Source of the DNA: Styela clava
Taxonomy: Eukaryota
DNA: 64,000 nucleotides
Assembly: GCF_964204865.1 (NCBI RefSeq)
Contig: NC_135252.1
Coordinates: 15,376,001 to 15,440,000, forward strand
Direction of reading: 5' to 3'
Made by a program: the position numbers and the translations under genes. The first letter of the stretch is position 1; the number at the start of each line of letters is the position of its first letter. The notes below the pieces were generated by a model. The model did no database searches. It had not been told where the DNA came from and worked only from the letters and a program-made list of their open reading frames with translations. This document shows positions 1-18,500 of the stretch, in pieces.

Positions 1-35
1 GCCCTGGACATAACAAATTCCAATAATAATACTAC

Positions 36-2216
36 CATGGTCCATGTCACTTCCTGAATCTACCACGTCTTCATATTGATCCTCCTCATCATTTTGTTCT
101 TTCACTGAAGTACTGATTTTCGCAGCAAATCTGTGTAATGTTGTCTTAGGTAATTGATTGTTCAAACCTAAAATTTAAGTAAATTTTTGCAAAAACAGAA
201 ACTTTTATTAAACACACATTTATTTAAATATACAATTCAAAAAGGAAGTTATTTCTAGAAGCCACATCCAAACTTCCATGCCATTATTCCTTAGTATATA
301 ATCAACATACCTTTTATAAAAGTCGCCATTACAAAATAATATGAAGTATAATCATGTCCATCAGTCCTAGCCAGCTTTTCGATATCAAGCTTCTTATTCA
401 AAGTCCTTTCGATTAGTTTTTCCAACATCTTTTTTTGTTCCTGAAAGAAGATGTCACGGATATTAATGATTTGCAACTAATTTCGGTTGGAAATCCATAA
501 ATGGATTTACTTTGAATAAAAAAAAGTAAAATTTGGCATTTTTCGTGATTTCAAGCATATGCAGTTAATAAGAGGAGCATATTTACAAGTATTGGTCCTT
601 TTTCTCTGCCTATATGTAGGCTACATTTATTTCAAATAGCATTACTTTAGAAATGCATTTAAATTGGGTAAATTCTCTAAAAGGTACATTTCCGCTTTAC
701 CTCATTAATCCGATCTCGATAAAGAACTAGGATTTTTGATGCTTCAACTGATTGTTTCTTCCTTAAAAATGCAATAACTGCCTGCTTTACAGTATGATGC
801 CAAATGTCACAGAAATTCTGCAAAAAATAATAAAACTCATTCTCACGTTATAAACATTGAAGAATTTGAAAACCTAAGAAATGAATGGCACAGTTACCGG
901 TACCTCTAAATCGATGCCTATTGATTTTCTAAAGATTCCTAAAGGCTTTTGATCTAAACTAAACACAAGATTGTAAATAGATCTATCTCTTGACTCAAAA
1001 TCTTTTTTTAAATATAGCATCAGTGTCAAAAGTAGATTGTCATGCAGCATAAGCAATACAGTGTCTATCCATATGGCGGGAATATACACTAACATTAACA
1101 TTATCAGTTTTATATTATCAAAATAATTTTGAAAACATAGTCATTACATCTCCATAGCATGAAAGTACAATAATGTCCAAATAATTTTGTCTTCTATAAT
1201 TCAATTAGAGGTGATAAAGTTTAGAAAAAAACACCAATTTGGATTGTGTGAATTATAACAGAACATGGTAATAAATATCAACAGTCAAAATTTATTTGTA
1301 CTAAATTCTTGGCACTTTAATGACTTACCGGATGTTTGATTACATTTTGAAATGCCAGTGCAATATCACTCAAGCGAATGAGAGCAGTTTCTAATGGAGC
1401 CAAATTCTCAGAAGTAAACCTCTGGTCAATATGTTCACCTAACATCAAGCTGGAATTATATAAAACAATACAAGATTAAAAATATTTAACTTGATATTAA
1501 TTGGACGGATTTGGTAGATGACAAGCTGTATTGTTGGCTCAGTGTTTCTCAACTGGAGGAATTTTGTTAGGAGTGAGAGTTGAGCATAATACTAGTTAAG
1601 CATTTATTAACTACTGAACAAAGAACAGAGTTTTACGCACAGTGGGGGAGGAAAAAGAGATCTTAAATCAGCATAAAATGGAATGTATCGAAAAAAATTA
1701 GAAACAATTACTTTAGCTAATTGTTATGCACTAAATCAAAATTTTGTTTTTTAATTAATAAGTATTAGAAAAATAACAATTGAGGGACAGCAGCATTGTA
1801 TCACGGTAAATGAAAAATATCACAATGTAGAGACAATGCAATCAAGCCCCTGTTGGTCAAGGATGGGATCTTCTTAATCCTAATAACTAGCATTATTATT
1901 AAGGATTTCGTTATTTCCAAATTTAAATACAAGCTCTGAGTCTTTTATCAGTGCCTAAGAATCGAATTGATATTTATCAAATTAGTAAATGTACTTACCA
2001 TTCGACAACGATAAACAAGAGAATTCTTTTCTGAAAGGATGAACATTGAGATAGATAAGTTGGAACTTTTTTGATCTTGCTCATAAAACAAGAAACCAGT
2101 TTAGTTATGGCTGGATAAGTTGTCATCAAATGAATGAATGATTGCACTCCTCTATTTGTTTTTTCAACATCATTTAAATCTATAAACAAACTGGACAGCA
2201 TACTGTCTGCGACCAT
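36..2216 (-). CDS. TERF: Telomeric repeat-binding factor (TRF1/TRF2-like), N-terminal TRFH dimerisation domain; 3' part runs off the window
   Basis: GT-AG exons 2216-1999, 1449-1329, 817-701, 440-311 and 167-36 splice in frame. They give ...VECLMLGEHIDQRFTSENLAPLETALIRL...VKQAVIAFLRKKQSVEASKIL...DYTSYYFVMATFIKGL..PKTTLHRFAAK. This resembles recalled TRFH motifs (TRF2 [37 protein letters not shown]; TRF1 STFLMKAAAK). The Myb domain would lie outside the window. Confidence 0.75.
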
Positions 2217-2961
2217 CTTGCCCTGAAAGGAAAAGCAAAGTTTCAAACATCCTTATGTGAAAACTGATGCGTATGTTAAGTGTGATGGTTTGTGTTTAGC
2301 ATCTTGGGCATCATACATCATTATCTTGGGTTAAAACTCATGCAAAACATCTTAATCAATTTGTATTAATCACTACAATGACTTGACTCACAGAAACACT
2401 TTCTAATATGAAAACTGAGAATAAGGTAATTAATTAGGGGTATAATTCAAAACAAATATATTTGAGTTTTATAGGATTTTGAAAGTAAATATTTGAAATA
2501 TGATTATCCTGATATTGTAAAGATGCAGATATAGTACAGATTACAGTACTTTAGATAATTTATTGAAGGTATCAGTGAGATAGTTAAATGACAAGATAGA
2601 ATACAGTGATGCATTGTACATAATTTTTTTTGTCATATTGATATTGTGGAGACTAGTGAGCATTGAATGGATGTTGTCTTCAAGTTTTGTGTGAGTTTAG
2701 GTCACCCATGGTTCGTGATAATGCATAGGCATCCCCCGGCCATAGAAGTTCTCTGGATTGCAGGAAATATGATTTATGTTTTTATCTTCACTAAATATGT
2801 GTGTGTTTAATCATCAAAGACAAGTTCAAAAGAAAACACATATATCACTCCGTAAAGGAAAACCAGGCCCGATATAGCGAAAATAGACATTACCATACTC
2901 TGATTATTTCCATATATTTTATTCGTCACAAACAAAAAAGTCAAAAACTGAAACACAAATT

Positions 2962-4061
2962 TCACATTGAGTCATCGGGTAGAGAAGCCACTGTAGTATT
3001 TGGAACAGAAGTACCAGTAGATAAAATGGCAGAAGAAGTTGTGCTATTAACAGCACTGGAATTTCTATTTGATTGCATTGATGTCATTTCTGTTGCATAA
3101 ATCTCATCAAGAAACGTCTTGACAAATCTATGAAATAAATTAGGATTGTCAAGATATGCGGGATGACTACCATTAGGGATGACTTTTATTTTGCTACCAG
3201 GTATATTCGCTATAACTTCACTAGTTCTTTTGCCCCAAGTATCCCTCGAGCCATAAACAATCAATGCTGGTAAAATAATTTTCTGAAATTTTTCTTTTGT
3301 TCCGCCATAATTAGAAGGCGCTATTGGGATATATCCCCTCAGTTTAGAAGAATGATTAAGCACATAAGGTATTGAGTAGCGGCCACTCATTGATGGGCTG
3401 ACAAGAATAGGTCTTTCAATTCCAATATTAGCAATAAGTTCATCCATAAAATCATTAGTGTCTCCTCTGAAATAGCCTTTTGTGCGTCCAAATCCTGGTA
3501 GATCCACAGCAATAGGATTGTAGCCATTTTTTGCCAAGAACCGTAATGTTCCTAATTTTCGCCAAGTCTGTGACGAGAAAGCAGCTCCATGGAGAAGTAG
3601 AATTGGAAGTTTTGTATCAGAACCATCAACAACTTTAGCAGTTTGAAAGTAGACTCGATGTCCATTTGTCAGATATGCACCAGTTGAATACTTGATACGA
3701 ACTGGTGGTGGAACAGTGGTAGTTGTAACACTGACTTTTAAACCACCGTTACTCTGTTTTCCTCCTGGAATGTACAAAAGTGAATCAGTTAACAGTATTT
3801 TAAATTAAGCAAGATAATGATTAAGTGATAAAAACTTAAATTCTTTTTCGAAAGACTCTATAGTGATAAAGTGGAACTGTTATATACCCTACCCTGTTCA
3901 TTTACAGGATTAATTAAACAATACAAAGTAAAACAGTTATCAGATTTATAACTATTCATAATCATAACATAAAAACCACTTAACATATATCCTACATACA
4001 TACCATTTGCTGAGGCTTTGAAGATGCAACATAAAATCACAATCACAAGTTTTCCTTCCAT
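2962..4061 (-). CDS. ABHD14: ABHD14-family alpha/beta hydrolase with signal peptide/anchor and Ser/Thr-rich tail
   Basis: Exon 4061-4004 (MEGKLVIVILCCIFKASANG, donor GTATGT) splices in phase to exon 3764-2962 (acceptor TTCCAG). It carries LLLHGAAFSSQTW, AVDLPGFG, the ABHD14-type nucleophile elbow SPSMSG and GSHPAYLD. Confidence 0.9.
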
Positions 4062-4875
4062 ATTTGATAGCTTGTTTTTTGACTATACCTATGCCACTCA
4101 CAAGATATATATGTACATACAAAAATGTACAATGTCATGGTGATACTATCAGCTACATCATATACCTTTGCCCAAGGCAAAATACTAACCAAAATTAGTG
4201 ATAACGACCACAATATTTTGACTATCGGTACTTCATATGGATGTCATGATTTATTTATAAGATCAGCAACTCATGATGAACAACTCCGCATTATACAGCA
4301 AAATATAATGAAAATTGTGACAGATTATTTAACAATCATATAGCCTATAAAAGAGGTAGATAAAATTTTAATATTATGCACTATCCTGTCAACTAGATTT
4401 CAAAGTAGCAGAGATGTACCGTACAAAAGCCAGAGTGCTGTTTGCGAGTAACACAAGCTAATGACCCGTTAGAGATTGAATACCAGAAATGAAAAAATAT
4501 TCCATGTCAATGTCACTTTAATAAACAATCTCAGCAGTTGTGAAATCTCAGTGATTTTTAGTAATAACCTCTTAGTGTCACTTTGGTATGTGATTGAGAT
4601 CATGTTAAACCAGTGAGATCATGTACCAAGGTATTTTTATGTCGTTGAAATCGCATATCAATGTGGCACAAAACAATTTTTATGCCTGGTGGGGGATGGT
4701 AAGAGTGTCAAATAGGCCATGGGAGCAATGTTGGAGACTGGTGCACTATACATAATTTCGGTAATTGCAATATGTTTAAAAGGAAATGTCAACTGTGAGA
4801 AAAAAGTAACAAATCTGTCATCTTATTATTGTATGGTGTGATAGAAGAATCTGTGAGTTTGATTGAGATTGTTAC

Positions 4876-4921
4876 CTTGAACCCAAAGATAACACTCAAA
4901 AGTTTATTATCAGTGTTAAGT
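4876..4921 (-). other. Probable 46-nt 5'UTR exon of the ABHD14-like gene
   Basis: Strong acceptor CTCTTTCTGCTTTTCACAG and donor AAG|GTAACA on the minus strand; no ATG inside. Confidence 0.45.
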
Positions 4922-6158
4922 CTGTGAAAAGCAGAAAGAGACGTCTGAATGGAAAAAATAATGGCATGTCAATCAGCGATGAAAATTGTTTTGGGCCATA
5001 CATCAATCAGCCCAATCATATTTGTTCATCCTACTTATAAGAGCAGCATCACCTTTTTTTATCATGGTTTTAAATATCGCAGATTGCTGAATTTTAAAAC
5101 ATGGCTTAAAAATTATAAAATTCTTTCAAGGGTTGTATAGCTAATCAATGACTGTTATGCCTATTTTGTCATGTATCGGTATTCGAAAAAAAAGCTACTT
5201 TGCATTTGTACATGCTTTTACTCGTATAATCAACATACCTCCATAACATCTTTTACGGTTACTTCTTGCTTTGACATTTTTACTTTAAGTCACTCAACAT
5301 CCAATTCAAGAATTTCACATTATTATTATATTTATATTTGCTGCAAAAAAACACAGTTACATTACAAATATCAATTGAGAAAGCATGATACAAAGTTTGC
5401 TGTATTGAACATAGAGAAATCGAAAGCAAGCATTTGTAACCAAATTTATCAAATGGCCCAGGCATATAAAAACGATAGCAATCTACCATCAATAAAATAC
5501 CACTTCATACATCAAAAGTAGGGCCCGACCGGTACCAACATAGTAATAAGATTGATAGTTCTTTAACACTACACAAAATAGGAAAATATCAATGTTTTTC
5601 CACAAAAATGATGGGTTCTGGTCTTGGCATTACTTAACAATTTCTGCATATATCGGTGGGTCTTTTCTGGCCTCAATCTGACTACACCACACAAAAATCA
5701 CATCATTCTGATATGTCAATCACATAAAAGGAAAATAAGCATAAAAATGATAGCCTACAACAAGCAACGAAAACTTGGCATTGAGTGAATTTGAATATGG
5801 GAAAATCACTATGACACCATATCACAGAATTAGACAACAACAATTGATGTTAAAATTAGCCAATACTTTAATTCATTATTGGTAGGTGATATCGGTCCGA
5901 CCCTACTATGGAAATGAAAATATTGGTATACATCCTGATATTAAGGATAGAAATTCGTATTTTATTTATTATTGACTGGACTAGATGAATCAATCAGAAA
6001 ATTAGTCATGTACACAAACAAAAACCATAAATGAACCAAGTCTCAATGAAAAACTAGGAAGAATGAAACCCAATACTAAAACAGATCAGAACTTAAATTA
6101 CGCCATAAATACTTCTTAATAAGCACTGTATTGTTTAATTAAACCACCAATTCTAAAC

Positions 6159-6414
6159 CAGTGGGTCATAGCCTCTTGGCCAGAGCAACATTTTCAGATG
6201 GGACACAAAAAATTGCTAAAGATATTGATAAATTTAGCTAGATTGATGATAGTATCAGAGAATGACAATGCTGTATTTTGCTACAGGGTGGCATTCTAAT
6301 TATTGAAGTAAAGGTGTTTATTTTTGCAGAAAGGATTTTTTTCATAGTTACCCCCCTGCAGAATTTTTGTGCAAAGAAAATGGGCCATGAGAGAAAAAGG
6401 GTGTAGAACCACTG
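6159..6414. mobile_element. Degenerate hAT/Charlie-type MITE
   Basis: Ends CAGTGGGTCATAGCC ... GTAGAACCACTG resemble the other CAGTGGTTC..GAACCACTG elements in the window; TSD not preserved. Confidence 0.5.
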
Positions 6415-6536
6415 GTTTGGATCAATAGTAAAATGGTTTGAAAAATATTGAATTATATAAGAACCCAAACTAAACAAACCAATCTATAAATAGGAGTTTT
6501 TTTAAACAAATACAAAAATTTCAAATATTGAAAAAG

Positions 6537-7829
6537 TCACGGATTCATGAAAGAAATTTGTTTATCAGATGGAAAATCGTCCATAACTAGTATTCCCAAT
6601 TTTTTCATCTCGTCAGAGATTCCATCAATAAACCCAAACCAATAGATAACTATACCAGGACCAAATCTATTCCAATAACTATAATACTGGTCTCTCAAAT
6701 ATTCACTATGAGTTTGTAAGTCACCGAATGATGCTTTGCTTTCTATCCAACAAACCGGATAACCATTTACTGATATTGGAACTTCCAGTTTTACATCAGG
6801 AGTTTTGTCATATCCTCGTTTTCTTAGATCATTCTCATCCAGAAATGGTAGATTGTGCCTTTTTACATTTCGAACGAGTTTTTCCTCAAATTCAAGACCA
6901 ACCGAATGTCGGATAGCATCATTAATTGGGCCGTAACACACATCAAAACTTATACAATGCAAAACTTGTTCACGAAGCTTCTCATCTGGTATAAGAAAAG
7001 GATCATTCATCCAAGATGACACTTTATTTTTGATCGATGTTTGTGAAACAGAGCTTGTGCTAGGGGGTTTGCTAGTAGGCATTGATTGTGTGGAAGATTG
7101 GTGATTGCTCATTGGCGGAAAACTAACATCTGGTTTAGATTTATTTGATAACCCAATACGAGAGGCCGGAAAAGGTGAATATTTGGTTCCATCAACTCTA
7201 GCAAGATCTACAGTTTTCTGCACTTGTTCATTATTTATATTCTCCATTTTGAGTGATGCAACTGTAGTTTCTTGTGTAACATTTTGATTTTTTCTGTTAC
7301 CAATCACTGTTCCCGTAGCAAAATTTTCTTTGTTGTTAGCAGAAGCTTTTTCTTCAATGAGGTATTGCTCTACAATAATTCTTGCCATTAAACAAGGTGG
7401 AATTTCGAAATCATTTGCAATACCAATCAATACAGATTTGCCATTTACATCAGAAGAACCACTGTCAGTGCCATTCGAAACCGCTTCTTTTCCATTGCAC
7501 AATTTTGCAATTTCACTTGAGGTTTGTTCTATATTTTGTGCGGGTAATTTGTTACTTTTCACTACATTTTGTTTATGATTCATTTGATGTGAGATATTCA
7601 TTCGTTCTTTATATAATTTGTAATAATATTTCAATTTCTCTTCTTTCATTTTTGAGTGGTACGTCATTTTCACTTTTCGTTGCAAACAGGTCAAAAATAT
7701 ACTCATTAGTGTATGATATTGATATTGAGACCCAAAGTTTGAAATAACATTAGAGAGAACTGTTCTTGGACAATTAGATTTGTGGTAATTGATAAAGTCA
7801 AAGATTGTGCTGTATTCTTCCAGCCTCAT
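6537..7829 (-). CDS. CDIN1: CDAN1-interacting nuclease 1 (C15orf41) homolog, intronless, 430 aa
   Basis: Motifs PCLMARIIVE, CYGPINDAIRHSVGLEFEEKL, LRKRGYDKTPD..LEVP, WIESKASFGD, QYYSYWNRFGPGIVIYWFGFI; PD-(D/E)xK-like C-terminus. Confidence 0.93.
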   Translation of the reverse strand: MRLEEYSTIFDFINYHKSNCPRTVLSNVISNFGSQYQYHTLMSIFLTCLQRKVKMTYHSKMKEEKLKYYYKLYKERMNISHQMNHKQNVVKSNKLPAQNIEQTSSEIAKLCNGKEAVSNGTDSGSSDVNGKSVLIGIANDFEIPPCLMARIIVEQYLIEEKASANNKENFATGTVIGNRKNQNVTQETTVASLKMENINNEQVQKTVDLARVDGTKYSPFPASRIGLSNKSKPDVSFPPMSNHQSSTQSMPTSKPPSTSSVSQTSIKNKVSSWMNDPFLIPDEKLREQVLHCISFDVCYGPINDAIRHSVGLEFEEKLVRNVKRHNLPFLDENDLRKRGYDKTPDVKLEVPISVNGYPVCWIESKASFGDLQTHSEYLRDQYYSYWNRFGPGIVIYWFGFIDGISDEMKKLGILVMDDFPSDKQISFMNP

Positions 7830-7965
7830 TCTTCAAATAGATTGAATTTGAAGATTTCTAGCAGCAAACACAAAAAATTTATAATTGAAAAAAAAAATGT
7901 GGTTGTAAGCCAAATTGGATATATTTCACTACAAATTTATTTCAGTTTTAAAATTATCCTGTTTA

Positions 7966-8349
7966 CTATGCTACTTGTTTTCCAGTTGGCTTTGGAAGCG
8001 AAGCTTGAATTTTCATTAATGCTTGTCTTGTTGTCTCTTGTTTCTTTTCCAAATCCTCAATTGTTTTCTCTTGTCTTTTAAATTCCTCTGTAATATAATC
8101 AACTCGTTTTTTCACATTCGCTTTTGCTTCATTCAAATCCTGCTTCACCAATACAGGACCTGTAAGCTTATAAACAGTGGCATCACTTTCAAGAATATCC
8201 AACTCTTTTTGTACGAGAGTATTCTCTGTAAGTTGAGCTTCAAGCTGTTGTCGTAGTTTCACACACTTGCCAATAGCTTTTTGATTTTTTTGCAATTCAG
8301 AAACGTGACTTTGAAATTCTAGCTGTACTTTTTTATTAACTTTTTCCAT
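7966..8349 (-). CDS. PFDN6: Prefoldin subunit 6, intronless
   Basis: RQQLEAQLTENTLVQKELD...VYKLTGPVLVKQDLNEAKANVKKRVDYI is the beta-prefoldin PFDN6/YKE2 signature; 127 aa. Confidence 0.95.
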   Translation of the reverse strand: MEKVNKKVQLEFQSHVSELQKNQKAIGKCVKLRQQLEAQLTENTLVQKELDILESDATVYKLTGPVLVKQDLNEAKANVKKRVDYITEEFKRQEKTIEDLEKKQETTRQALMKIQASLPKPTGKQVA

Positions 8350-9559
8350 CCTGCTATAATATCACAAAAATACAAAAAAGATACGTTACATGAAGAACAT
8401 GTGGAAGCTATATATACATAAATGTAGAAAATATTGATGAAAAACAGCAAAACATCTGAATATATTGAATATAATGAAAATAAGTCATAACATCACAATA
8501 TAGCCATTTCGAAAAGACTGCACATTTAAATAACCCCATAAAGTGAAATATCATCCTTCGATAAGTTATTTTTTTAACTGATGGCGAGCTTGACTGTAAT
8601 CTTTGTCCATGTTGTTCTATTGAGCAATTTGTAAAATGAGTAATTTGAAACTTCAAACAATGATACAACACATAAACATAAAAAAAAAAAAAAACTTAAT
8701 GACTCCCATGGACAATAATCTCTACTAGGCAAAAACGAATGATCAAACAACACCTTACAAAAGAATAGGTTATAACTGTATACAAAATATAGCAAAAAAT
8801 CTTGCCAACTTATACATATCATGATTGTATTTTGCAGAAGCTGGCTAATATACAGAAATTAACATTGTGTAAGATATGTCAGAATTTAGTTCTTAATCTA
8901 ATATCGCAACAAAATGCAAATACTCGATGCACTACACAGAATTCTAGTACTCCATATAGCTTAAAAAGCATTTTTCTAGGAAAGTTGGTAGCATACGTGA
9001 CGCATTAATTGACTTAATATATTGCAAGAAATGACATGAATATTATTTTGAAACAACTGTCAGAGAAAATTTTTTTATTCAAATAATAAAACTAAATTCA
9101 TAAGAAACGATTACTAAAACAGACATGATTCCCTCAAAACAAATAACTTGGTGAATGCAGCATAAAATTTCATTAAACATAGAATTACAAAAGAGAAAAC
9201 GGGCAACAGACGGGCACAATTACATATATGCATTAAAAAATGTACAGACTTGAAATATGTTTTTACAAATATAGCAATTTGCTTCAAAACTATCACAGTT
9301 AAAGCTGGACTAAGATACAGGAATGCCTCCAAGGTGCCAATGGTTGGCATATCAGCCTCAAAAGATAGTGTCCAAAATTTTATTCGAGGTTAGTTTTGCA
9401 TTTCACACAACATAAGTTTTACCCAGGATATAATAATAAAGACAAATTATTCTCAAATAATGAACTTCCATTCCTATCGCAATATTTTGTTAGTTATTTA
9501 AAGGAAGATGAGTTCAGAAAATTTGCTGCAAAAGCTTATATTATGTCAATCTGTAATCT

Positions 9560-11263
9560 TCAATCAATGTCTTCATCAGAATCTTTCTCTTCTGGTAATT
9601 GCATATTGTGGACTTTTTGTTGAAAAGGAACCAGATTACCAGTATCTGGATCGATACATACAGGTTTGATAATATCATCACTTGACAATTTCGAAATCTG
9701 ATTTGCTAATTGAACAGCAAGATATTCTTTCTGTTCTTCCGACATACCTTCCATCGGATTGGGAATATTAGGTGGAATGTGACCAGTAATGGGGTTAATT
9801 TTCTCTGCATTTTCTAAATATTCTTCTGTGTCAGAGTCAGAATCACAATCAGAATAAACAGTGTCTCCCTGGCCTCCTGCGAGTAACCCCCTGCTTGCAA
9901 GCAATCCCGCAGCATTTCCATAACCAGTGTATTTAACAAGTCTCTCCACCTTCTCTCTGCACAAGACAAATACAAAATCAGCAGCAGCCGCTTTTACTTC
10001 TGTGTTAGCATGTGTGAAAAGCTTTATCAATTTATTACGAAATTCTGGTCCAACTTCAGGACGATGCTCAAAATCCTTACGTGGTGGGATAACGTAATTC
10101 TTGCAATATTTTCTGACATATCTTGATGTACGACTGATGTGGCTCAGCAGTGAAAGAACAGGTTGCAAGCTTTCAGTTGTCAATGACTTATTGTGAATCT
10201 TCAATTCAACTTCTTTTAAAATATTCAAAACAGCACTGAGATCTCTTTCCTCCCATTGCGGGATGTCTTCGCCATTGTATGAAAACACATCATCAGGGTC
10301 ATACTTGTCAATTAAAGGAATTATCGTATCATCAAGTAAACAAGACCTGGGCACAGTGTATAAACAATTTCCTGCGTCACCATGTAATTTCTCCGTCAAA
10401 ACTTTGTCATCACCTGCTTGAACCAAATACAATTTACGACAAACTGATGTCAAATCTTCAAATTCAATAGTAATTCTTTCTTCCTTTACTTGACTTTCTT
10501 CATGCCGATATTTCAGATTCAAATTGAACAGTGTTCTTAATATTTCACAACAGGATTTTGCATGTGCAGGAGAAATACTAGCTCTGATACATGGCGTAGG
10601 TTTAACAACTCTTTTTGATGATGTCAATTTCGAATTCAAATAATCCAACAAGACTCGGCTACCCTCGTGGTTTTCAATAATCTTTGTTCTTGCTTGCACA
10701 TTGAGCACAGAAACGAGAAACAGCAATCGAAGTGTTAAAAATTCAACTTCAGTATCATTTGATTCATCTTTGGGATCCAGAGATTTCAAACGTTGCAAAA
10801 TGCCTTTTATAAGTTCATCGTCGCAACAATAACCTTGCGAATCTTTTGAAATGAACATGATATTGCATAGACATTTACTAGCAAGTGTAAACAGTATCTT
10901 AGACGTTTCGATGACCGTCATTGCCTTCCCATTTTTATCCAGTAATCCAGCAATCACTGTCAATATCTTCCATGTTTCTCGATTCAAAAATCTTCCATTC
11001 ATTGACATATGATCTCTAGACATTACGACTAGAGCAGAAAGGCTTTCCACCACATATTCAGATTCTGAGGTGCTTTCACCATCCAGAGAAGACTTTAAAA
11101 TATCCAATAAATGTGAGACAAATAGTTTTCTTTCTTGCATGTCATTTTTGCCAAAAATGAAAGCGCCACTATTCTTTGCATTGAACTTTTTTAATGCTTC
11201 TAATGATTTATCAGTATCATTCTCAGATAATATAGTATTAGGATATCCATTAATAGGTTCCAT
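9560..11263 (-). CDS. RIC8: Synembryn / RIC-8 G-alpha GEF and chaperone, intronless
   Basis: KCLCNI, LRLLFL, EILRTLFN, RPEVG..RNKL, FVLCREKVERLVKYTGYGNAAGLLASRGLL, YSD.DSDSDTEEY, INPITG, MSEEQKEYLA. First ATG at 11263 (the ORF track starts at an upstream GTG). Confidence 0.95.
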   Translation of the reverse strand: MEPINGYPNTILSENDTDKSLEALKKFNAKNSGAFIFGKNDMQERKLFVSHLLDILKSSLDGESTSESEYVVESLSALVVMSRDHMSMNGRFLNRETWKILTVIAGLLDKNGKAMTVIETSKILFTLASKCLCNIMFISKDSQGYCCDDELIKGILQRLKSLDPKDESNDTEVEFLTLRLLFLVSVLNVQARTKIIENHEGSRVLLDYLNSKLTSSKRVVKPTPCIRASISPAHAKSCCEILRTLFNLNLKYRHEESQVKEERITIEFEDLTSVCRKLYLVQAGDDKVLTEKLHGDAGNCLYTVPRSCLLDDTIIPLIDKYDPDDVFSYNGEDIPQWEERDLSAVLNILKEVELKIHNKSLTTESLQPVLSLLSHISRTSRYVRKYCKNYVIPPRKDFEHRPEVGPEFRNKLIKLFTHANTEVKAAAADFVFVLCREKVERLVKYTGYGNAAGLLASRGLLAGGQGDTVYSDCDSDSDTEEYLENAEKINPITGHIPPNIPNPMEGMSEEQKEYLAVQLANQISKLSSDDIIKPVCIDPDTGNLVPFQQKVHNMQLPEEKDSDEDID

Positions 11264-11849
11264 TGTCAGACTGTGGTTCACACTAAATGAAGGAAATCAC
11301 TAATACTGTAATAGTATAGTTTAGTACAAGTAATGATCTGAACAGTTGTATATTGAATAATTATGAAAGGAGGATTTCTTAATAATCCTTTCACACATAA
11401 GGTATACACCTATTGTGAGAGATAAACAACTTAATTATTCTTTAAACCACTAACCAGAAACACAAAACATAAATAATAGACCAAATGAGTGATTCAAAAT
11501 AAAATCTTTTATTAATGACTGGGTGGTAAAGAATGAGTTAATCAGATTTTTTCACCACCCAATACATGAATAAGTAATTGAAACTAGTTCAGTACTATTG
11601 ATCTCTCTATACCAGAATACTGCAATATGTTAAAAGTTATAAGCACCGTACTGCTGGATGAATTTAATCTGACAGAGAAAAATTCTTGAATACCAAGTAC
11701 AGAACTATTGCGCTATAAACAATGGGGATAAAAATATGTGGTGTGGGGCACGTGGAGTCTAACGAAGTACACGGAGCAAGTTTTTAAATAATGCCAACCA
11801 AAAAAAAAAACATGATGTAAAAAAAATAAAGTCCAATATTTATTATTTT

Positions 11850-13000
11850 TTTATAATAAAAGTAGTCTCGGACAGAAGTTGAGTCAGAACGCTACTGGTA
11901 TATGGTACTCTATTTCAGTTTACAGTACGACATAGTCTGCCCATACCCTACTGGTATATGATATGGAATATACTGCTGTACTGGCTTAGTTGAAAATCGA
12001 GTGGATTTTATTTTAACTAAACGCAGAAACGCATCTGTCAAGTATTTCATTTCCGTCCTAGACAGACTTTAAAAAAAAAATTTCACATCACATTCTGTTT
12101 GGGATTATTCAAGCAGTTTCGGTACCAAAGTTACCCCAGCCCACACTCGCTCAGCCCACACTCAGCCTGACGTCAATGGGTCAACCAACTATTTTACCAC
12201 TTTATAAACGTTAATACATAAAAACTTGGTGGCTATGACAATATAGAGACCATATTGGATATACACAGCGCAAATGCAATACCAAGCACGGACCAGTTAC
12301 CCCTAGTATGGCCTGTCAAAAACGAGTGTGGGCTAGCGTCTCACGAGTGTGGGCTAGCGTCACACGAGTGTGGGCTGGCATCCTACGAGTGTGGGCTAGC
12401 GTCACACGAGTGTGGGCTGGCGTTCTGACAGTGTTATACGGTAAGTTAAGGCATCCTAAACGCTCACAGATTACTAAATTACATATATCCACGTTTACCT
12501 CAGCACCAGAACCTCTCAGAGTCCGGCAATTGAAAGCACAAAATGTGGTAGACTAATCCTGTAATCGGAGACTTCATACAAAACCAGCTTGGCCATATTT
12601 TTTTAATACGGGAAACTTATTATTTTTTCTTCGCTGCTCACTGTTTAGAAATCAATACCGGTACCGGTACGGTATTCAATTTAACAACGGCAATCGCCTG
12701 ACCTTTATAAAATACCGGTACCGTAATTACAATCTGAATATATAAAGTGTGTCACGTACTGAAGAACTGTACCGGTACGGTATACAACTAAATAAAAAGA
12801 TTTTGATAATTTTAAATATACCGGCTGCACCCGTACCGACACCATACGGTAACTCAGTAACTAGCCTCCTCCCACACCAAATAAAAAGGTCCAGACGAAA
12901 ACGGACTCTTGCGCGAATACTAACCCTATACTTATATTTTTGCGACTGGCGTTATGCAAAACAAACATTTGCGAGAATGCAATCGCAGAAACAACTTAGC
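11850..13000 (-). promoter_or_regulatory. Putative promoter region for the minus-strand gene cluster
   Basis: Visible rise in CpG content relative to 1-11.3 kb; cluster of TACCGGTA/GTACCG/TACGGTA motifs at ~12656-12850; position upstream of RIC8. Function is inferred. Confidence 0.4.
12322..12426 (+). repeat. Minisatellite, 5 x 21 bp (ACGAGTGTGGGCT(A/G)GC...)
   Basis: Five head-to-tail units at 12322, 12343, 12364, 12385 and 12406; two inverted core copies (AGCCCACACTC) at ~12138-12163. Confidence 0.9.
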
Positions 13001-13543
13001 GACAATGAATGAGCAGATAGATGGATAGATAGAAGTTTATTCATCACCCAGTCATTAGCCAACAAATCAAACACAAACAACAACATTCAATAAGTAAAAG
13101 AAGAATAAATCGACTAACAACGGAATTGATAGGAGGTTGGAAGGACCATACGGTCACTAAATCAAGCAGCGAATAAATTTTTGAGAAAAAGAAAGATATT
13201 CATATTTGATTTATCCTGAAAATAAGGGGAACCAATATAATAGGACAGCCGTGTGTATATGTATATATATAAGTTTATTTTGTTTTTGCGAATGAATCGA
13301 AATAAAATCTATCTATCAAGATGCACACATATAGCCTAGGGATAAGTTAATTTATAAGATATTCTAGCCAAGATAAAAGTTTTTGCATTTATAGAAAATT
13401 TAAGTGATTTGATTAGGTACCTTACCTGCTGTGCTGGGATATTCACACATTCAATAGTTGATGCAGCGCACGCAATAGTCCCAAATGAACGCTTTCAAAA
13501 GAGGTATGAATACACCTGCTTCGAATCAACGAAGCATGTTCAA

Positions 13544-14313
13544 TGTAATTTTTGAGGGGTAATTAGCCTCGTCATAGGCTGACGCGCGACGTCGTTAATT
13601 AATTAAGATTCTAATCCACCCTATCCTCATCGGTAGCGGTAGCTCAGGGGAAACGTAGTAACACGATCAAACATTACGACTTTGGTTCGAACCCCACACG
13701 GTAGATTGAGTTGAGGGAATGGACCAGCAGACATGACAGACAGCCGAGGGGTAAAGAGGGCAGACGAGAACAGAGTTGAAAAGGAAATAGAAGCCAGTGA
13801 GTGAGTGGAGAAGGCCAAGCGGATCAGGAGGGTGGAGCGAAAATAGAAATCACCAAGGGGACCACTGAGAGAGACAGTGAGAGTGAATTAATCAAGGCGT
13901 AGCCATGGAAATCGGAAAATGAGCGAAAATACATCAAGCCAGAAGGCCAAGCGATCAGAGCGGAGCGCAATAATAACAATCAGCGAGTAGACGAGTGAAA
14001 GTAAAAAGTTAATAATGGGAAATTGGCGAAAAGAACAGCCAAGAGGAGAGAAGCGCGATCCAGCGAAGCCAATTATAGTAATCACGAGATAATAGGAGAC
14101 ACGAGTGGGAGTGGTGGATTCAGCGAGGCCAAAAAATGTAACGAGTTAAAAATAGGAAGGAAATTGGCGAAAAGAGCAGCCAAGAGGAGAGAAGCAGCAC
14201 GGGGTTAGAGTGACCGAAATCAGCGGTAGGAGGAAGAAGGGTAAAAAAAAAACTTGACAAACAATAAGTAAATGATATGATGTAGTCCTAAGTTGACGCA
14301 ACCACAGCTTACA
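13544..14313. mobile_element. Probable solo LTR (Gypsy or BEL/Pao type)
   Basis: 770-bp purine-rich block bounded by TGTAA...TTACA. Flanks TTCAA / TCCAA match 4/5 as a TSD. Internal direct repeat AAATTGGCGAAAAGA.CAGCCAAGAGGAGAGAAGC at ~14020 and ~14161. Confidence 0.65.
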
Positions 14314-14374
14314 TCCAACACAATTAAGCCAATGGACATCATCGGTCATGAATTGCCGACTTTGGGATTTTTAA

Positions 14375-14689
14375 AATGGCGATATATCTTGCTTAAAATA
14401 ATCTTGAGGATTGAAAAAACAACACAAATTCGACGAATCAAAATATCGCAAAAATACGATTCCTATCAATCTATGGTTGGAAGTTTAGCACGTATTTGAT
14501 GTTATTTTAAAATAATAATCTTTCATTTCAGTAATGGCGATATATCTTGCTTAAAATAATCTTGAGGATTGAAAAAACAACACAAATTCGACGAATCAAA
14601 ATATCGCAAAAATACGATTCCTATCAATCTATGGTTGGAAGTTTAGCACGTATTTGATATTATTTTAAAAAATAATCTTTCATTTCAGT
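14375..14689 (+). repeat. Recent 158-bp direct tandem duplication
   Basis: 14375-14532 and 14533-14689 are nearly identical (about one substitution and one 1-nt indel). Confidence 0.92.
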
Positions 14690-15588
14690 TATCGTGATAG
14701 TAAAATCTCAACTCAAAGGCGAGCTACGATGGACACAATTAAATGACTATGACAAGACATTATAAACGTTCTCATCGGCCACGGATTGAATATTTTATGC
14801 AACAGAAAACTCGTTATCCGCTGAAAAGTCTTTGTTCAACGAGTTGCCTAATCGCGAATAAGGTTGCGTGGAAATTTTCGATCCCAAATTTGGCCTTCCC
14901 CTCCCTTTCAAAAATCCTGGCTGCGATCCTGCTTATAGAAAATGTGATATATATATTCGAATTTCCGCATTGTTGCCATATTTCGACGGCTCAGTTGCCA
15001 AATCTCATTTCAACTGTTGTTATTGCCTCTTTGGACTGTTACAAAATTAGCCGATCTATAATCGAATTGCTCGCGGAGCCCCTAGTTTTCTCTCACGAAG
15101 CCCTGTGGCTTTGTACGGAGCACTTTGAGAACCTATGCTCTAATATCTGAGTGCTATGTGTTAAAAAGTTTTGACACTTATTTTGAAGGCAAAAATATTG
15201 GAAATTATTGCGAGAACATTGTTTTCCTTGATAAAGTTTCAGTAAAAGGACGAAATGTATACCCAATCAGATATTTACCTATTTAAAGCCATTTATTTAA
15301 AAACATAACAACCTCAACATTAAGTATTTGTAAAGAAAAATGAACATATTTATATAACGAGAGTCGAGCACCATCGTAAAATGAAACACTTATACTGTAT
15401 GAACCACTCATTGTCGTGTATAAAAAGGATCCTTTGGTACAAAAAATTGATGGTGCAGAACAAGAAAAAACTCAATAAAAAACTTTGGGAAAAAATGCTC
15501 ATGGCAAGTTTTCTGAACGCATTCGTCAGTAATCCAATCTTCTGACTTCTTTTGTGAACACAGAAGAAAATATTGCTTCTTTTGCCTA

Positions 15589-18500
15589 CTACTGATGTGT
15601 GAGCTGGGCATTGACCAAACTGAAAAAATTAATTGAAAATAGAATTCAGTGCTGGCATAAATGCAAAACAAATACTACTCAAGTATCATTAAAGATAGCT
15701 GGCATGTACGTCATCATGTCTTTTAAGAATTCTACACAGACATCAAGAAAAGTAAATGGAAATAAAATCGGAAGAGAACAGACAAGACTGCAAGATCGAC
15801 CGACCTCTAAAGAAAAATTATGACTGTTAGCTGTTCAGGTGACAAGTAAATAATAATAAATCCTAACCAAATGCGGACTGCATAGAAGGAAAGTAATGAG
15901 AATTGAGAAATATTTTCATTGAAACTTGAGAAACAAGAGAATATTAGGCGTTCTGGCCCAAACCCAGATTGATAATAACATTCAAATATATACGGACAGC
16001 CCTAATTAGTATTTACACTTTAGGAAAATCAATGAGCATAACACGTGAATAAATAAATGAAAAATGGAATTACTAATAGATAAAAAAATAAAAAATTCGA
16101 ATATTCGCTTTGGACAATGTAAAAAAGATGAAATAAAAAACATCATAAGTATACATGGTTGACTATCCCCAAATTCCAAAATGAAGTTTTATTTCTAATC
16201 AGCAAAATTTTTTACTTCAGTAAAATTATTAATATTGACGAAGAAGGAAATATTGAACCTCAATATTAAAATTCAAACCACGCTTATTATGCTGATAGCA
16301 AGTAGGCGTCTATGTTATGATTATACCTGTAGAATGCGCCTCGCTTCTTTAGAAGTTCTTCATGTGTTCCAGTTTCGACAACTTTGCCCTTGTCAACAAC
16401 TGCGATGATGTCTGCATTTTTAACAGTTGACAATCTGTGTGCTATTATGATACTTGTACGACCTTTCCGTGCTTTGTCTAATGCTTCTTGCACAATCTGT
16501 AAAACATATCAAAAAATATTAAAGAAGACGTCTTATATTATATTCAGTCATTCGCAAAACTACAAATCATATCAGTGAGGTAAATTACAGTATATACGGT
16601 ACTAACAACGGCAGCGCTTTATCAGTTGGGAATAACTGCAAACAGATTTTATTCAAAAATTTGACATCTTACATTTAAAATATCTCTTTATGTGTATTAC
16701 AACGCAAATATATTTAGATTAATTTGGAGTAACCAGTTTGGTAGAAATGCTAAAAGGATGAAATCATCATGCTGAATAGTTTAACATAATACCTTTTCAC
16801 TTTCTGTATCCAATGCTGATGTTGCTTCATCCAGTAATAATATAGTTGGTTTTCTCAATAAAGCTCTCGCAATAGCAATTCTTTGTTTCTGCCCACCAGA
16901 CAGTTGGCCACCTTTTGCACCTGCTTTTGTATTGTAACCCTGACCATTTGAAAAGTTGTAGGAACAGGCATTAATAAATTTATAATATAAGGGCAATTTC
17001 CTGTCTCAACATGAAGTTGTGCATTATGTTATTTTACGATACAATTACCTATGAAAAACAATCAGAAGCTATCGAAAAACAGCAAACAAATGATAAACGG
17101 CCAAAACTCAGGTTAATTCAATATTTTGAACTTCAACTGATTTCAAAAAGGTAAATAGCAGTATTAAAACACTTAAAAGACTGCAAAATACAATAAATAA
17201 ATAAACTACAAACCTCAGGAAGACCGGATATAAATTCATGAATATTTGCACCAGCGGCAGCAGCAGTTACCTCTTTATCAGTGTATGGTCGTGTTTTGTC
17301 ACCAAGTCTACGCAATTATAATACGGAAGAATTTAATGAAATATAACTTTATAATGCCCTTACTGGTACTTGGTTTTTGTAAATTAATTCAGTTAACAAT
17401 TTTTTCTGGGAGACAAATGCATGTTGCTACACTAAAATCCAGGCAACTAAATATGGGGAGAATAAAAAATTAAATTTTCAGAAGCCAGAATTCGGAAAAA
17501 CACAGTCGATTTTTTTCTGCATTCCTTCATAAATTTTTTCTATATGTATTATATTGGCTGTATTTGATTGATATAATAAATTCCTGATTTTCGAAGATTT
17601 TTTTCTTCTGGATGAAATATCATTTCAGCCACTTGAAAGTCGAATTTTTAAATATTGTGCAAATTTCACTGCTAATGTGGCCAAAATTGAGAATATATTT
17701 CATATTCTATACTTCAAAAATTTCCTCGATTGCATTATTAAATTATTCAGTTTTGGCAATCTCTGCTTGTCAATCATGTTAGTACGAAATGAATATAAAA
17801 AAATTATTTGATGAAATGTTTGTGTTTGCATGAAAACGTGATATCTTATGAAACCTAGTCTGTGTTTGAATACCCCACCTAATTGCAGCAAATTGAATGT
17901 TTCAACTAAATAATAGATATGAACAAATTTGAATTCTTCTAACAAATTTTAAGAAAGAATATAAAATTACAAAATATTTTCTTTGATGCTTATATTGAAC
18001 AAGACAGGTTCTTGTGATACAATTCCCATTTGTTGTCTCATCCATGCCACATTCAATGTTTTTACATCAGAACCATCAACCATCTGGAAATAAATAAAAC
18101 ATAAAAATTAGAATAATCCATTGGAATCAAGCCATTATCTAAGTATAGATCCACGATCAGATGAACAAACCATCTATCTTTTAATCAGAATATATTCAAT
18201 ATGTGCCATGCTACAAAGAAGAAGGAAATGCTTATATTGCATTAAAATTAAATTCTATTTCTCCATCAGTTTTTGATTTAAATTTACAGTCTCCCGAAAA
18301 AATTCTGAAATTAGAAATATTTTGAGCTAGAACAAATCAAAAAAATTCTACAACTTTCTCAGACCAAGTTCCACAAGATCTTATATCACAATATTTTAAC
18401 CGAAGCATCTAACTGACATTGAAGAAATAATTCATTAATTAATACAGTGGTTCTCAAAACTTCTTGGTATTGCGACACCTTTAGGAAAATATGTTAAAGT

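What the first reader, a model, noticed from the sequence alone, without database searches (positions are those of the whole stretch)
36..11290. Candidate five-gene trans-spliced operon: RIC8-PFDN6-CDIN1-ABHD14-TERF
Seen: five co-oriented genes in 11 kb. An acceptor sits just before the ATG of RIC8 (CACAG|TCTGACAATG, 7 nt), PFDN6 (TAGCAG|GATG, 1 nt), CDIN1 (TGCTAG, 28 nt) and TERF (TTTCAG|GGCAAGATG, 6 nt). The block is CpG-poor and the only promoter-like region is upstream of RIC8. Known: tunicates and some other invertebrates resolve polycistronic pre-mRNAs by spliced-leader trans-splicing. Inference: one transcription unit links G-protein chaperone, prefoldin, nuclease, hydrolase and telomere genes. 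The wider gaps (0.7-2.5 kb) leave room for separate promoters, so the operon may have fewer than five genes.
Basis: partly seen in the sequence, partly recalled or inferred. Interest (0 to 1): 0.75.

Follow-up and report, generated by a model that had tools for sequence, protein, structure and literature searches.

The report
Sea-squirt gene cluster, operon unproven
Five same-direction housekeeping genes of a sea squirt lie in one block, but only the two closest ones look like an ordinary sea-squirt operon, and no direct proof of a shared transcript was found.

Summary
The window is Styela clava DNA, going by source names on proteins of this contig. Five minus-strand genes are real: RIC8, PFDN6 and CDIN1 as single, single-copy exons, then ABHD14B and a five-exon gene whose TERF identity I could not confirm.

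An AG before an ATG carries almost no weight: about 79% of the window's ATGs have one within 30 nt. ABHD14's ATG is at 4061, not near 4921. The CpG-poor block is real: o/e 0.27-0.63 over 1-11900, against 1.07 upstream.

Contigs of three likely-RNA runs cover genes and spacers from 5291 to 11290 without a gap. One contig joins CDIN1, PFDN6 and RIC8. No spliced-leader-like loose end lies at the three acceptors covered, and two RIC8 contigs read straight through the proposed AG. Contigs would probably lose a 16-nt leader anyway.

Verdict: PFDN6-CDIN1, 136 nt apart, is probably a Ciona-type operon pair. RIC8 may join it. ABHD14 and the TERF-like gene are unsupported, so a five-gene operon is not shown.

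The scan has noted many similar candidate operons elsewhere in this genome.

The parts
11901..15500 (.). CpG-rich stretch (o/e 1.07) between the 3' end of an ABCB1-like gene and RIC8; the likely promoter region of RIC8
   Evidence: CpG o/e; an ABC-signature ORF at 16781-16996 on the minus strand marks the upstream neighbour
9560..11263 (-). RIC8 (synembryn) coding region: one exon, 567 aa, single copy in the genome
   Evidence: (Pfam Ric8, 7.4e-90)
11271..11272 (-). AG proposed as the RIC8 trans-splice acceptor. It is weak (7 of 15 pyrimidines) and is read through by the RNA contigs of X1 and X5
8350..9559 (-). RIC8-PFDN6 spacer, 1210 nt and unique in the genome. AATAAA only at 9384 and 9079. 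Covered over its whole length by likely-RNA contigs
7966..8349 (-). PFDN6-like prefoldin beta subunit: one exon, 127 aa, single copy. The AG at 8352-8351 lies one base before the ATG
   Evidence: (Prefoldin_2, 9.8e-20)
7830..7965 (-). PFDN6-CDIN1 junction, 136 nt. AATAAA at 7941-7936. T-rich tract plus TAG acceptor (AG 7859-7858), then a 28-nt leader to the CDIN1 ATG. This is the best candidate for a Ciona-type intercistron boundary
6537..7829 (-). CDIN1 (TPD domain) coding region: one exon, 430 aa, single copy. 419 of 430 residues identical to S. clava XP_039268315.1
   Evidence: (TPD, 1.8e-52)
4062..6536 (-). CDIN1-ABHD14 spacer, 2475 nt. Holds a roughly 290-nt interspersed repeat at about 6134-6426. 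The part 5291-6536 is covered by likely-RNA contigs. A strong unpaired-looking AG lies at 4923-4922
4004..4061 (-). ABHD14B exon 1 (MEGKLVIVILCCIFKASANG), with the donor GT at 4003-4002
2962..3764 (-). ABHD14B last exon (alpha/beta hydrolase)
2217..2961 (-). ABHD14-TERF spacer, 745 nt. AATAAA or ATTAAA at 2923, 2811 and 2564. GTGAGT donor at 2391, 169 nt upstream of the strong acceptor at 2224-2223
1..2216 (-). TERF-like gene, first five coding exons (2216-1999, 1449-1329, 817-701, 440-311, 167-1, running off the window). Its identity was not confirmed here

Best explanation
This is a compact cluster of housekeeping genes of the ascidian Styela clava, lying inside one CpG-depleted domain that is presumably gene-body methylated.

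Its core, PFDN6 followed 136 nt later by CDIN1, most likely works as an ordinary Ciona-type operon. One primary transcript crosses both genes. PFDN6 mRNA is ended by polyadenylation after its AATAAA. CDIN1 mRNA is made by adding the spliced leader at the TAG acceptor at 7859-7858.

RIC8 may feed the same unit. Part of its transcripts run past its two poly(A) signals (9384, 9079), through 730 nt with no further signal, and into PFDN6.

ABHD14B and the TERF-like gene are more likely separate units, possibly also trans-spliced or with their own 5' exons. A single five-gene operon is not shown.

SHOWN: the gene structures, spacing, CpG pattern and continuous contig coverage. INFERRED: co-transcription, use of the acceptors and addition of a leader.
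For: 1. The organism is an ascidian. Source names on proteins of this contig say Styela clava, and CDIN1 is 419/430 identical to a S. clava RefSeq protein.
2. In Ciona about 20% of genes lie in operons, defined by less than 100 bp between genes. Single-exon genes make up 38% of operon genes against 15% elsewhere, and 60% of the 5'-most operon genes (PMC2760879, passages read).
3. Here the three upstream genes are single-exon and single-copy.
4. PFDN6 stop to CDIN1 ATG is 136 nt, with one AATAAA and a T-rich TAG acceptor that falls in about the top 5% of ATG-proximal AGs.
5. Run X1 has one 4249-nt contig over 6541-10764, and X6 has one over 6898-9162. All 30 bins of 5291-11290 are covered in X1, X5 and X6.
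6. These runs behave as RNA. They hold 53-79 Mb of contigs, against 349 Mb for the likely DNA run and a 377-Mb genome. In X5 depth ranges from about 10-30 in the RIC8-PFDN6 spacer to 767 on PFDN6.
7. In X5 the CDIN1 contig reaches 7896, upstream of the acceptor. A piece attached to the PFDN6 contig covers 7867-7907, so RNA spans the junction.
8. The RIC8-PFDN6 spacer is unique sequence with no Pfam-recognisable ORF. It has no canonical poly(A) signal in its last 730 nt.
9. All segments of 1-11900 are CpG-depleted, with a sharp rise at about 11900.
Against: 1. No spliced leader was seen. None of the 14 listed loose ends lies at 11270-11272, 8350-8352 or 7857-7859. One further loose end was not shown.
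2. The RIC8 contigs of X1 and X5 are colinear through the proposed AG to 11290, and run 41 and 62 letters further.
3. The X5 CDIN1 contig runs colinear through the CDIN1 acceptor.
4. The high-depth X5 PFDN6 contig ends at 8355, five bases upstream of the exon start, joined to the opposite strand at 7907. That fits a transcript start or an artefact better than a leader.
5. Contigs cannot give strand, ends or single molecules, and the tool itself warns that a contig across two genes shows no single transcript.
6. I could not find the species' SL RNA gene.
7. In a related styelid, Botryllus, a two-gene locus with a 227-bp spacer gave joined transcripts but no leader, and its authors preferred read-through (PMC3691228, passages read).
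8. CpG-poor spacers also fit the 28.6% of Ciona genes not classed as free of promoter methylation (derived from the 71.4% given in PMC4776710).
9. Reads were never laid on 1-5290.
Confidence: 0.5

Rival explanations
1. The five genes are independent, tightly packed, monocistronic units. Each has its own short promoter inside the CpG-poor domain. Coverage of the spacers comes from long or alternative 3'UTRs, polymerase read-through, outrons of separately started trans-spliced genes, or antisense RNA.
For: - Gaps of 1210, 2475 and 745 nt leave room for promoters.
- In Ciona, neighbouring trans-spliced but monocistronic genes lie a median 2287 bp apart, whereas operon genes lie 1 bp apart.
- In X5 depth differs 25-fold or more between the spacer (10-30) and PFDN6 (767), and the PFDN6 contig ends at 8355, which could be a transcription start.
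- The RIC8 acceptor is read through.
- A GTGAGT donor 169 nt upstream of the TERF acceptor would make that acceptor a paired, cis-spliced one.
- Botryllus fuhc is a precedent for read-through without a leader.
- No leader was seen anywhere.
Against: - Only about 60-80 nt lie between the expected PFDN6 poly(A) site and the CDIN1 acceptor, very little room for a CDIN1 promoter.
- Three single-exon genes in a row are unlikely outside operons, if Ciona's 15% holds here.
- No CpG-rich break occurs anywhere in 11.9 kb.
- X1 and X6 show near-equal depth (about 50-90) on genes and spacers alike.
Confidence: 0.35
2. One promoter in the CpG-rich region above about 11900 drives a primary transcript of more than 11 kb through all five genes, and it is resolved by spliced-leader trans-splicing at each gene's acceptor.
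For: - One unbroken CpG-depleted domain covers all five genes, with a single CpG-rich flank.
- All genes are co-oriented.
- Likely-RNA coverage continues at least 1.2 kb past CDIN1 towards ABHD14, down to about 5345-5369.
- Strong acceptors lie at 4923-4922 and 2224-2223.
- Ciona operons of up to 6-7 genes are on record.
Against: - Kb-scale gaps are far outside the Ciona operon distribution.
- Several canonical poly(A) signals lie in each long spacer.
- The proposed RIC8 acceptor is not used in the assembled contigs.
- There are no read data at all for 1-5290.
Confidence: 0.1

Closest known systems
Ciona intestinalis/robusta SL-resolved operons (Satou et al. 2006, PMC1488885; Satou et al. 2008, PMC2760879; SLOPPR re-analysis, PMC7986045)
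   Same: Ascidian host, same-strand unrelated housekeeping genes, and enrichment of single-exon genes, especially at the 5' end. For PFDN6-CDIN1 there is also a very short gap with an acceptor just after the upstream gene's poly(A) signal.
   Different: Ciona operon genes abut, with a median of 1 bp and inferred cut-offs of 68-84 bp. Here three of the four coding-to-coding gaps are 0.7-2.5 kb, and mRNA ends are unknown. The leader was not seen, and the species' SL RNA gene was not found by me.
SL trans-spliced monocistronic ascidian genes with an outron
   Same: An unpaired-looking acceptor sits a few bases before the ATG, with low-level RNA coverage upstream of it. Kb-scale distances to the upstream gene match the median of 2287 bp.
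   Different: This class needs its own promoter upstream of each acceptor. No CpG-rich or otherwise recognisable promoter was seen in the spacers, though I had no valid eukaryotic promoter test.
Botryllus schlosseri fuhc-sec/fuhc-tm pair (PMC3691228)
   Same: A styelid ascidian with two same-strand genes, a short featureless spacer (227 bp) and RNA that bridges the two genes.
   Different: In that case 5'-RACE and primer extension were done and showed no leader, so the authors favoured read-through. Here no such experiment exists, and the PFDN6-CDIN1 gap is shorter.

Membership tests
Ciona-type (ascidian) SL-resolved operon | The host organism performs spliced-leader trans-splicing | tested here: inconclusive
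   The host is Styela clava by source names. SL trans-splicing is documented for Ciona, and is said to be described for Botryllus in the text of PMC3691228. I found no SL RNA gene array with four patterns built on the Ciona leader. Earlier scan notes report such arrays in this genome, which I did not check. No paper in the library holds both 'spliced leader' and 'Styela'.
Ciona-type (ascidian) SL-resolved operon | Same-strand neighbouring genes | tested here: met
   All five genes are on the minus strand.
Ciona-type (ascidian) SL-resolved operon | [quoted passage not shown] | tested here: inconclusive
   mRNA ends are not visible in contigs. Coding-to-coding gaps are 1210, 136, 2475 and 745 nt. 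Only PFDN6-CDIN1 can meet the criterion on sequence alone: AATAAA at 7941-7936 and the acceptor AG at 7859-7858. The others meet it only if the upstream 3'UTRs run 0.7-2.5 kb to the acceptor.
Ciona-type (ascidian) SL-resolved operon | Downstream genes' mRNAs carry the spliced leader at the acceptor | tested here: inconclusive
   No leader-like loose end lies at 8350 or 7857, or at 11270, among the 14 listed; one more was not shown. Contigs run colinear through 11272 and 7859. By my inference, assemblers trim short dead-end branches, so a 16-nt leader could be lost.
Ciona-type (ascidian) SL-resolved operon | A transcript that spans the cistrons (polycistronic precursor) | tested here: inconclusive
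   Single contigs span CDIN1+PFDN6+RIC8 in X1 (6541-10764) and CDIN1+PFDN6+spacer in X6 (6898-9162). A contig is not one molecule and has no strand.
Ciona-type (ascidian) SL-resolved operon | Enrichment of single-exon genes, especially the 5'-most gene (a supporting feature, not a defining one) | tested here: met
   RIC8, PFDN6 and CDIN1 are uninterrupted ORFs that match their Pfam families almost end to end. No joints were seen inside them in RNA contigs.

The most novel reading that the evidence does not exclude
Ascidian operons may not be limited to abutting genes. Here one CpG-island-like promoter above about 11900 would drive a polycistronic transcript of about 12 kb through five unrelated housekeeping genes. 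Its kb-long spacers would be upstream 3'UTRs that end exactly at the next gene's trans-splice acceptor. The CpG-depleted domain would then mark the true extent of the transcription unit.
Probability: 0.1. Interest if true: 0.5.

Novelty: new member of a known kind. Interest (0 to 1): 0.3.

Why it matters
If the PFDN6-CDIN1 pair, with or without RIC8, is an operon, it is one more instance of a well-described ascidian feature in a second ascidian order (Stolidobranchia). It is useful for annotating S. clava but not surprising.

It would matter more if the long-spacer, five-gene version held. Distance-based operon calling (less than 100 bp) would then miss a class of tunicate operons, and CpG-depletion domains could be used to find them.

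The check also gives a practical warning for the scan: an AG a few bases before an ATG is present at about four in five ATGs in this AT-rich genome, so it is not evidence of trans-splicing.

Tried and rejected
1. SL RNA gene hunt in the window's own genome.
- The Ciona leader plus GT, allowing up to 2 mismatches, gave 160 hits against 63 in the control.
- The excess is one array of roughly 90 copies on C3 at 24.85-24.96 Mb. Its 16-mer matches the Ciona leader at 15 of 16 positions. It is followed by TT, not GT, has no Sm-like site, and sits about 40 nt upstream of tRNA-Leu genes in a tRNA-Leu/tRNA-Ala repeat. I rejected it as an SL RNA gene.
- AAGGT plus the Ciona Sm motif gave 153 hits against 403 in the control.
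- The leader's 3' part plus GTA gave 45 hits against 47 in the control.
- The leader's 5' half plus NNNAAGGTA gave 30 hits against 28 in the control. 12 of the 30 are one 19-mer. In the two copies I examined (four stored loci covering two places) both flanks are conserved, so it is a dispersed repeat and not a leader gene.
- Two hits 25 nt apart on C13 look like a chance relic.

2. Rfam at gathering thresholds found nothing in the whole window.

3. The sigma-70 and terminator scan is a bacterial model. It gave 75 promoter-like sites against 64 +/- 9 in shuffles and is uninformative for a eukaryote.

4. Hidden genes in the spacers: 0 of 8 ORFs hit Pfam at E<=0.1.

5. Retrocopy idea for the three intronless genes: each has only this one locus in the genome, so no parent copy exists.

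6. Transposon insertion as the cause of the wide gaps. The RIC8-PFDN6 spacer is unique. The CDIN1-ABHD14 spacer holds one repeat of about 290 nt. Repeats therefore do not explain the gaps.

7. Inverted repeats at the 7907/8355 fold-back joint: only low-complexity matches. My reading is a cDNA snap-back artefact, or less likely an inversion allele. This is not settled.

8. My first guess for ABHD14's 5' exons (5277 and 4921) failed on reading frame, and the annotated protein replaced it.

9. Literature. No paper in the library holds 'spliced leader' with 'Styela'. Four hold 'trans-splicing' with 'Styela'; of the three listed, none is about Styela operons by its title. The Botryllus SL paper and the 2001 Ciona SL paper are not held.

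10. Supplements are closed, and I did not ask for them. The Ciona operon lists (additional files of PMC2760879 and PMC7986045) could show whether the Ciona orthologues of these genes lie in an operon.

Full report
WHAT IS THERE

All genes lie on the minus strand.
- RIC8: one open frame, ATG 11263 to stop 9560, 567 aa, Pfam Ric8 7.4e-90.
- PFDN6-like prefoldin: 8349-7966, 127 aa, Prefoldin_2 9.8e-20.
- CDIN1: 7829-6537, 430 aa, TPD domain 1.8e-52.
- Each of these three is the only copy in the 377-Mb genome.
- ABHD14B has two coding exons, 4061-4004 and 3764-2962. I took this from a 286-aa protein that a source names ABHD14B of Styela clava and that is encoded on this same 25.6-Mb contig. The start codon is therefore at 4061, not near 4921.
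- The fifth gene starts at 2216 and has at least five exons before it leaves the window. Searched exon by exon, 0 of 5 pieces hit Pfam at E<=1, so I cannot confirm that it is a TERF gene. I did not search a joined model.
- The species call rests on source names and on 419/430 identity of CDIN1 to XP_039268315.1.

THE ACCEPTORS

The quoted strings are present. How much they mean is another matter.
- About 79% of the window's 1294 minus-strand ATGs and 78% of its 1277 plus-strand ATGs have an AG within 30 nt upstream.
- An AG preceded by a pyrimidine and by at least 11 pyrimidines in positions -18 to -4 occurs at about 5% of ATGs.
- On that scale RIC8 (7/15) and PFDN6 (8/15) are unremarkable. 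CDIN1 (11/15) is fair. The TERF-like acceptor (14/15) and the AG at 4923-4922 (13/15) are strong.
- The last of these precedes no ATG and lies 860 nt above ABHD14's start.

CpG

The 12 segments of at least 237 nt from 36 to 11900 have o/e 0.27-0.63, the spacers included, and the 136-nt PFDN6-CDIN1 junction has no CpG.
- 11901-15500 has o/e 1.07. The ABCB1-like genes further up sit near 1.0.
- By established knowledge of ascidian mosaic methylation, this is the signature of a germline-methylated, broadly expressed domain.
- It fits one transcription unit. It also fits several adjacent methylated genes: in Ciona 71.4% of genes are devoid of promoter methylation, so 28.6% are not (PMC4776710, passages read).

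RNA EVIDENCE

- One search for runs found 13 holders in 4 studies. Nine of them hold 53-79 Mb of contigs and were guessed to be RNA.
- I laid X1, X5 and X6, one from each such study, plus X10, a likely DNA run with 349 Mb, on 5291-11290.
- I take the three as RNA for two reasons. Their contig totals are a sixth of the genome. In X5, depth runs from about 10-30 in the RIC8-PFDN6 spacer to 53 on RIC8, 283 on CDIN1 and 767 on PFDN6.
- All 30 bins are covered in all runs.
- X1 has a 4249-nt contig over 6541-10764, spanning CDIN1, PFDN6, the spacer and most of RIC8. X6 has one over 6898-9162.
- No intron-like joint lies inside the three genes.

Results against the operon reading:
- None of the 14 listed loose ends lies at the three acceptors covered. 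One further loose end was not shown.
- The RIC8 contigs of X1 and X5 stay colinear to 11290 and run 41 and 62 letters beyond it, so the AG at 11272 is not used in them.
- The X5 CDIN1 contig runs through its acceptor to 7896.
- The X5 PFDN6 contig stops at 8355 and continues with 41 letters of the opposite strand ending at 7907. I read this as a cDNA fold-back artefact, or possibly an inversion allele.

Limits of these data:
- They are contigs. They carry no strand, no ends and no single molecules.
- By my inference a 16-nt leader forms a short dead-end branch that assemblers trim, so its absence is weak evidence.
1-5290 (ABHD14 and the TERF-like gene) and the RIC8 upstream region were never laid.

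SPACERS

- RIC8-PFDN6: 1210 nt, unique in the genome, with no Pfam-recognisable ORF. AATAAA occurs only at 9384 and 9079. An X5 contig boundary at 9389 and the fall in depth from 53 to about 20-30 fit a main poly(A) site there. The remaining 730 nt have no canonical signal but are still covered, so some RNA runs into PFDN6.
- PFDN6-CDIN1: 136 nt, with one AATAAA (7941-7936) and the TAG acceptor 78 nt further on.
- CDIN1-ABHD14: 2475 nt, with nine AATAAA or ATTAAA hexamers, three strong donors and one interspersed repeat of about 290 nt.
- ABHD14-TERF: 745 nt, with three signals and a GTGAGT 169 nt above the strong acceptor. That donor could make the acceptor a paired, cis-spliced one.

COMPARISON WITH WHAT IS KNOWN

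- Ciona operons are same-strand genes less than 100 bp apart, mostly directly abutted, with the downstream gene carrying the one 16-nt leader.
- They number 1310, hold up to 6-7 genes, and are rich in single-exon genes: 38% against 15% elsewhere, and 60% of the 5'-most genes.
- A re-analysis gave a median intercistronic distance of 1 bp and inferred cut-offs of 68-84 bp. Trans-spliced but separate neighbours lay a median 2287 bp apart.
- What I read: passages of PMC1488885 and PMC2760879, and section 26 of PMC7986045 in full.
- In the styelid Botryllus, a 227-bp-spaced pair gave bridging transcripts but no leader, and read-through was preferred (PMC3691228, passages).
- Against these yardsticks only PFDN6-CDIN1 qualifies on sequence.
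- Three single-exon genes in a row favour an operon setting. Using Ciona's figures, and assuming independence and transfer to Styela, I compute 0.15^3 = 0.3% outside operons against about 9% inside. This is a rough estimate.

VERDICT

My own estimates of the chance that each link is a real operon junction:
- PFDN6-CDIN1: about 0.7.
- RIC8-PFDN6: about 0.35.
- ABHD14-TERF: about 0.25.
- CDIN1-ABHD14: about 0.15.
- All five genes as one unit: about 0.1.

None of this is a new kind of system. The scan has already noted many candidate operons in this genome, some with 9-30-nt gaps (unchecked by me). Interest is modest.

Noticed in passing
G000:C3:24847563-24961794 (sample held as L013): A tandem array of roughly 90 copies of tRNA-Leu and tRNA-Ala genes, with periods of 495, 633 and 1197 nt. 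Each tRNA-Leu is preceded, about 40 nt upstream, by a TATA-like run and a 16-mer that matches the Ciona spliced leader at 15 of 16 positions. The 16-mer contains an octamer-like ATTTGCAT, and its first nine bases can pair with a stretch 14 nt downstream. There is no GT donor and no Sm-like site.
   Followed up: partly
window 7907 / 8355: In run X5 the high-depth PFDN6 contig is joined at 8355 to the opposite strand at 7907. The two break points bracket almost exactly the whole PFDN6 transcription unit (448 nt). This could be a fold-back cDNA artefact or an inversion allele. No real inverted repeat lies at the break points.
   Followed up: partly
window about 6134-6426: An interspersed repeat of about 290 nt with at least 40 other copies at 67-83% identity across many contigs. 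The likely DNA run X10 shows about 4-fold depth at 6291-6490.
   Followed up: partly
window 6540: A 9-nt insertion right after the CDIN1 stop codon is present in the contigs of X5, X6 and X10 and appears as loose ends in X1. The assembly carries the shorter allele.
   Followed up: no
window 5345-5351: The T7 run in front of an AG at 5342-5341 is a contig break point. X1 shows at least 18 extra letters of the same homopolymer. X10 has a diverging haplotype from 5350. An X6 contig starts at 5369 directly after Illumina adapter letters, so many fragments may end there.
   Followed up: no
window 1-64000: CpG o/e falls into sharp domains: about 0.3-0.6 at 1-11.9 kb and again at 54-64 kb, and about 1.0 over the ABCB1-like tandem genes at 16-54 kb. 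This fits mosaic methylation of broadly expressed versus tissue-specific genes.
   Followed up: partly
L026, L029 (G000:C1:1026123 and C1:23527254) and 10 further places: A dispersed repeat family holds a 19-mer resembling leader plus GTA (12 of the 30 hits). In the two copies examined, both flanks are conserved. It is a transposable-element-like repeat, not an SL RNA gene.
   Followed up: partly
window 12322-12423 and 14375-14689: Tandem repeats lie in the CpG-rich region upstream of RIC8: 21 nt x 4.9 copies, and 158 nt x 2.0 copies.
   Followed up: no
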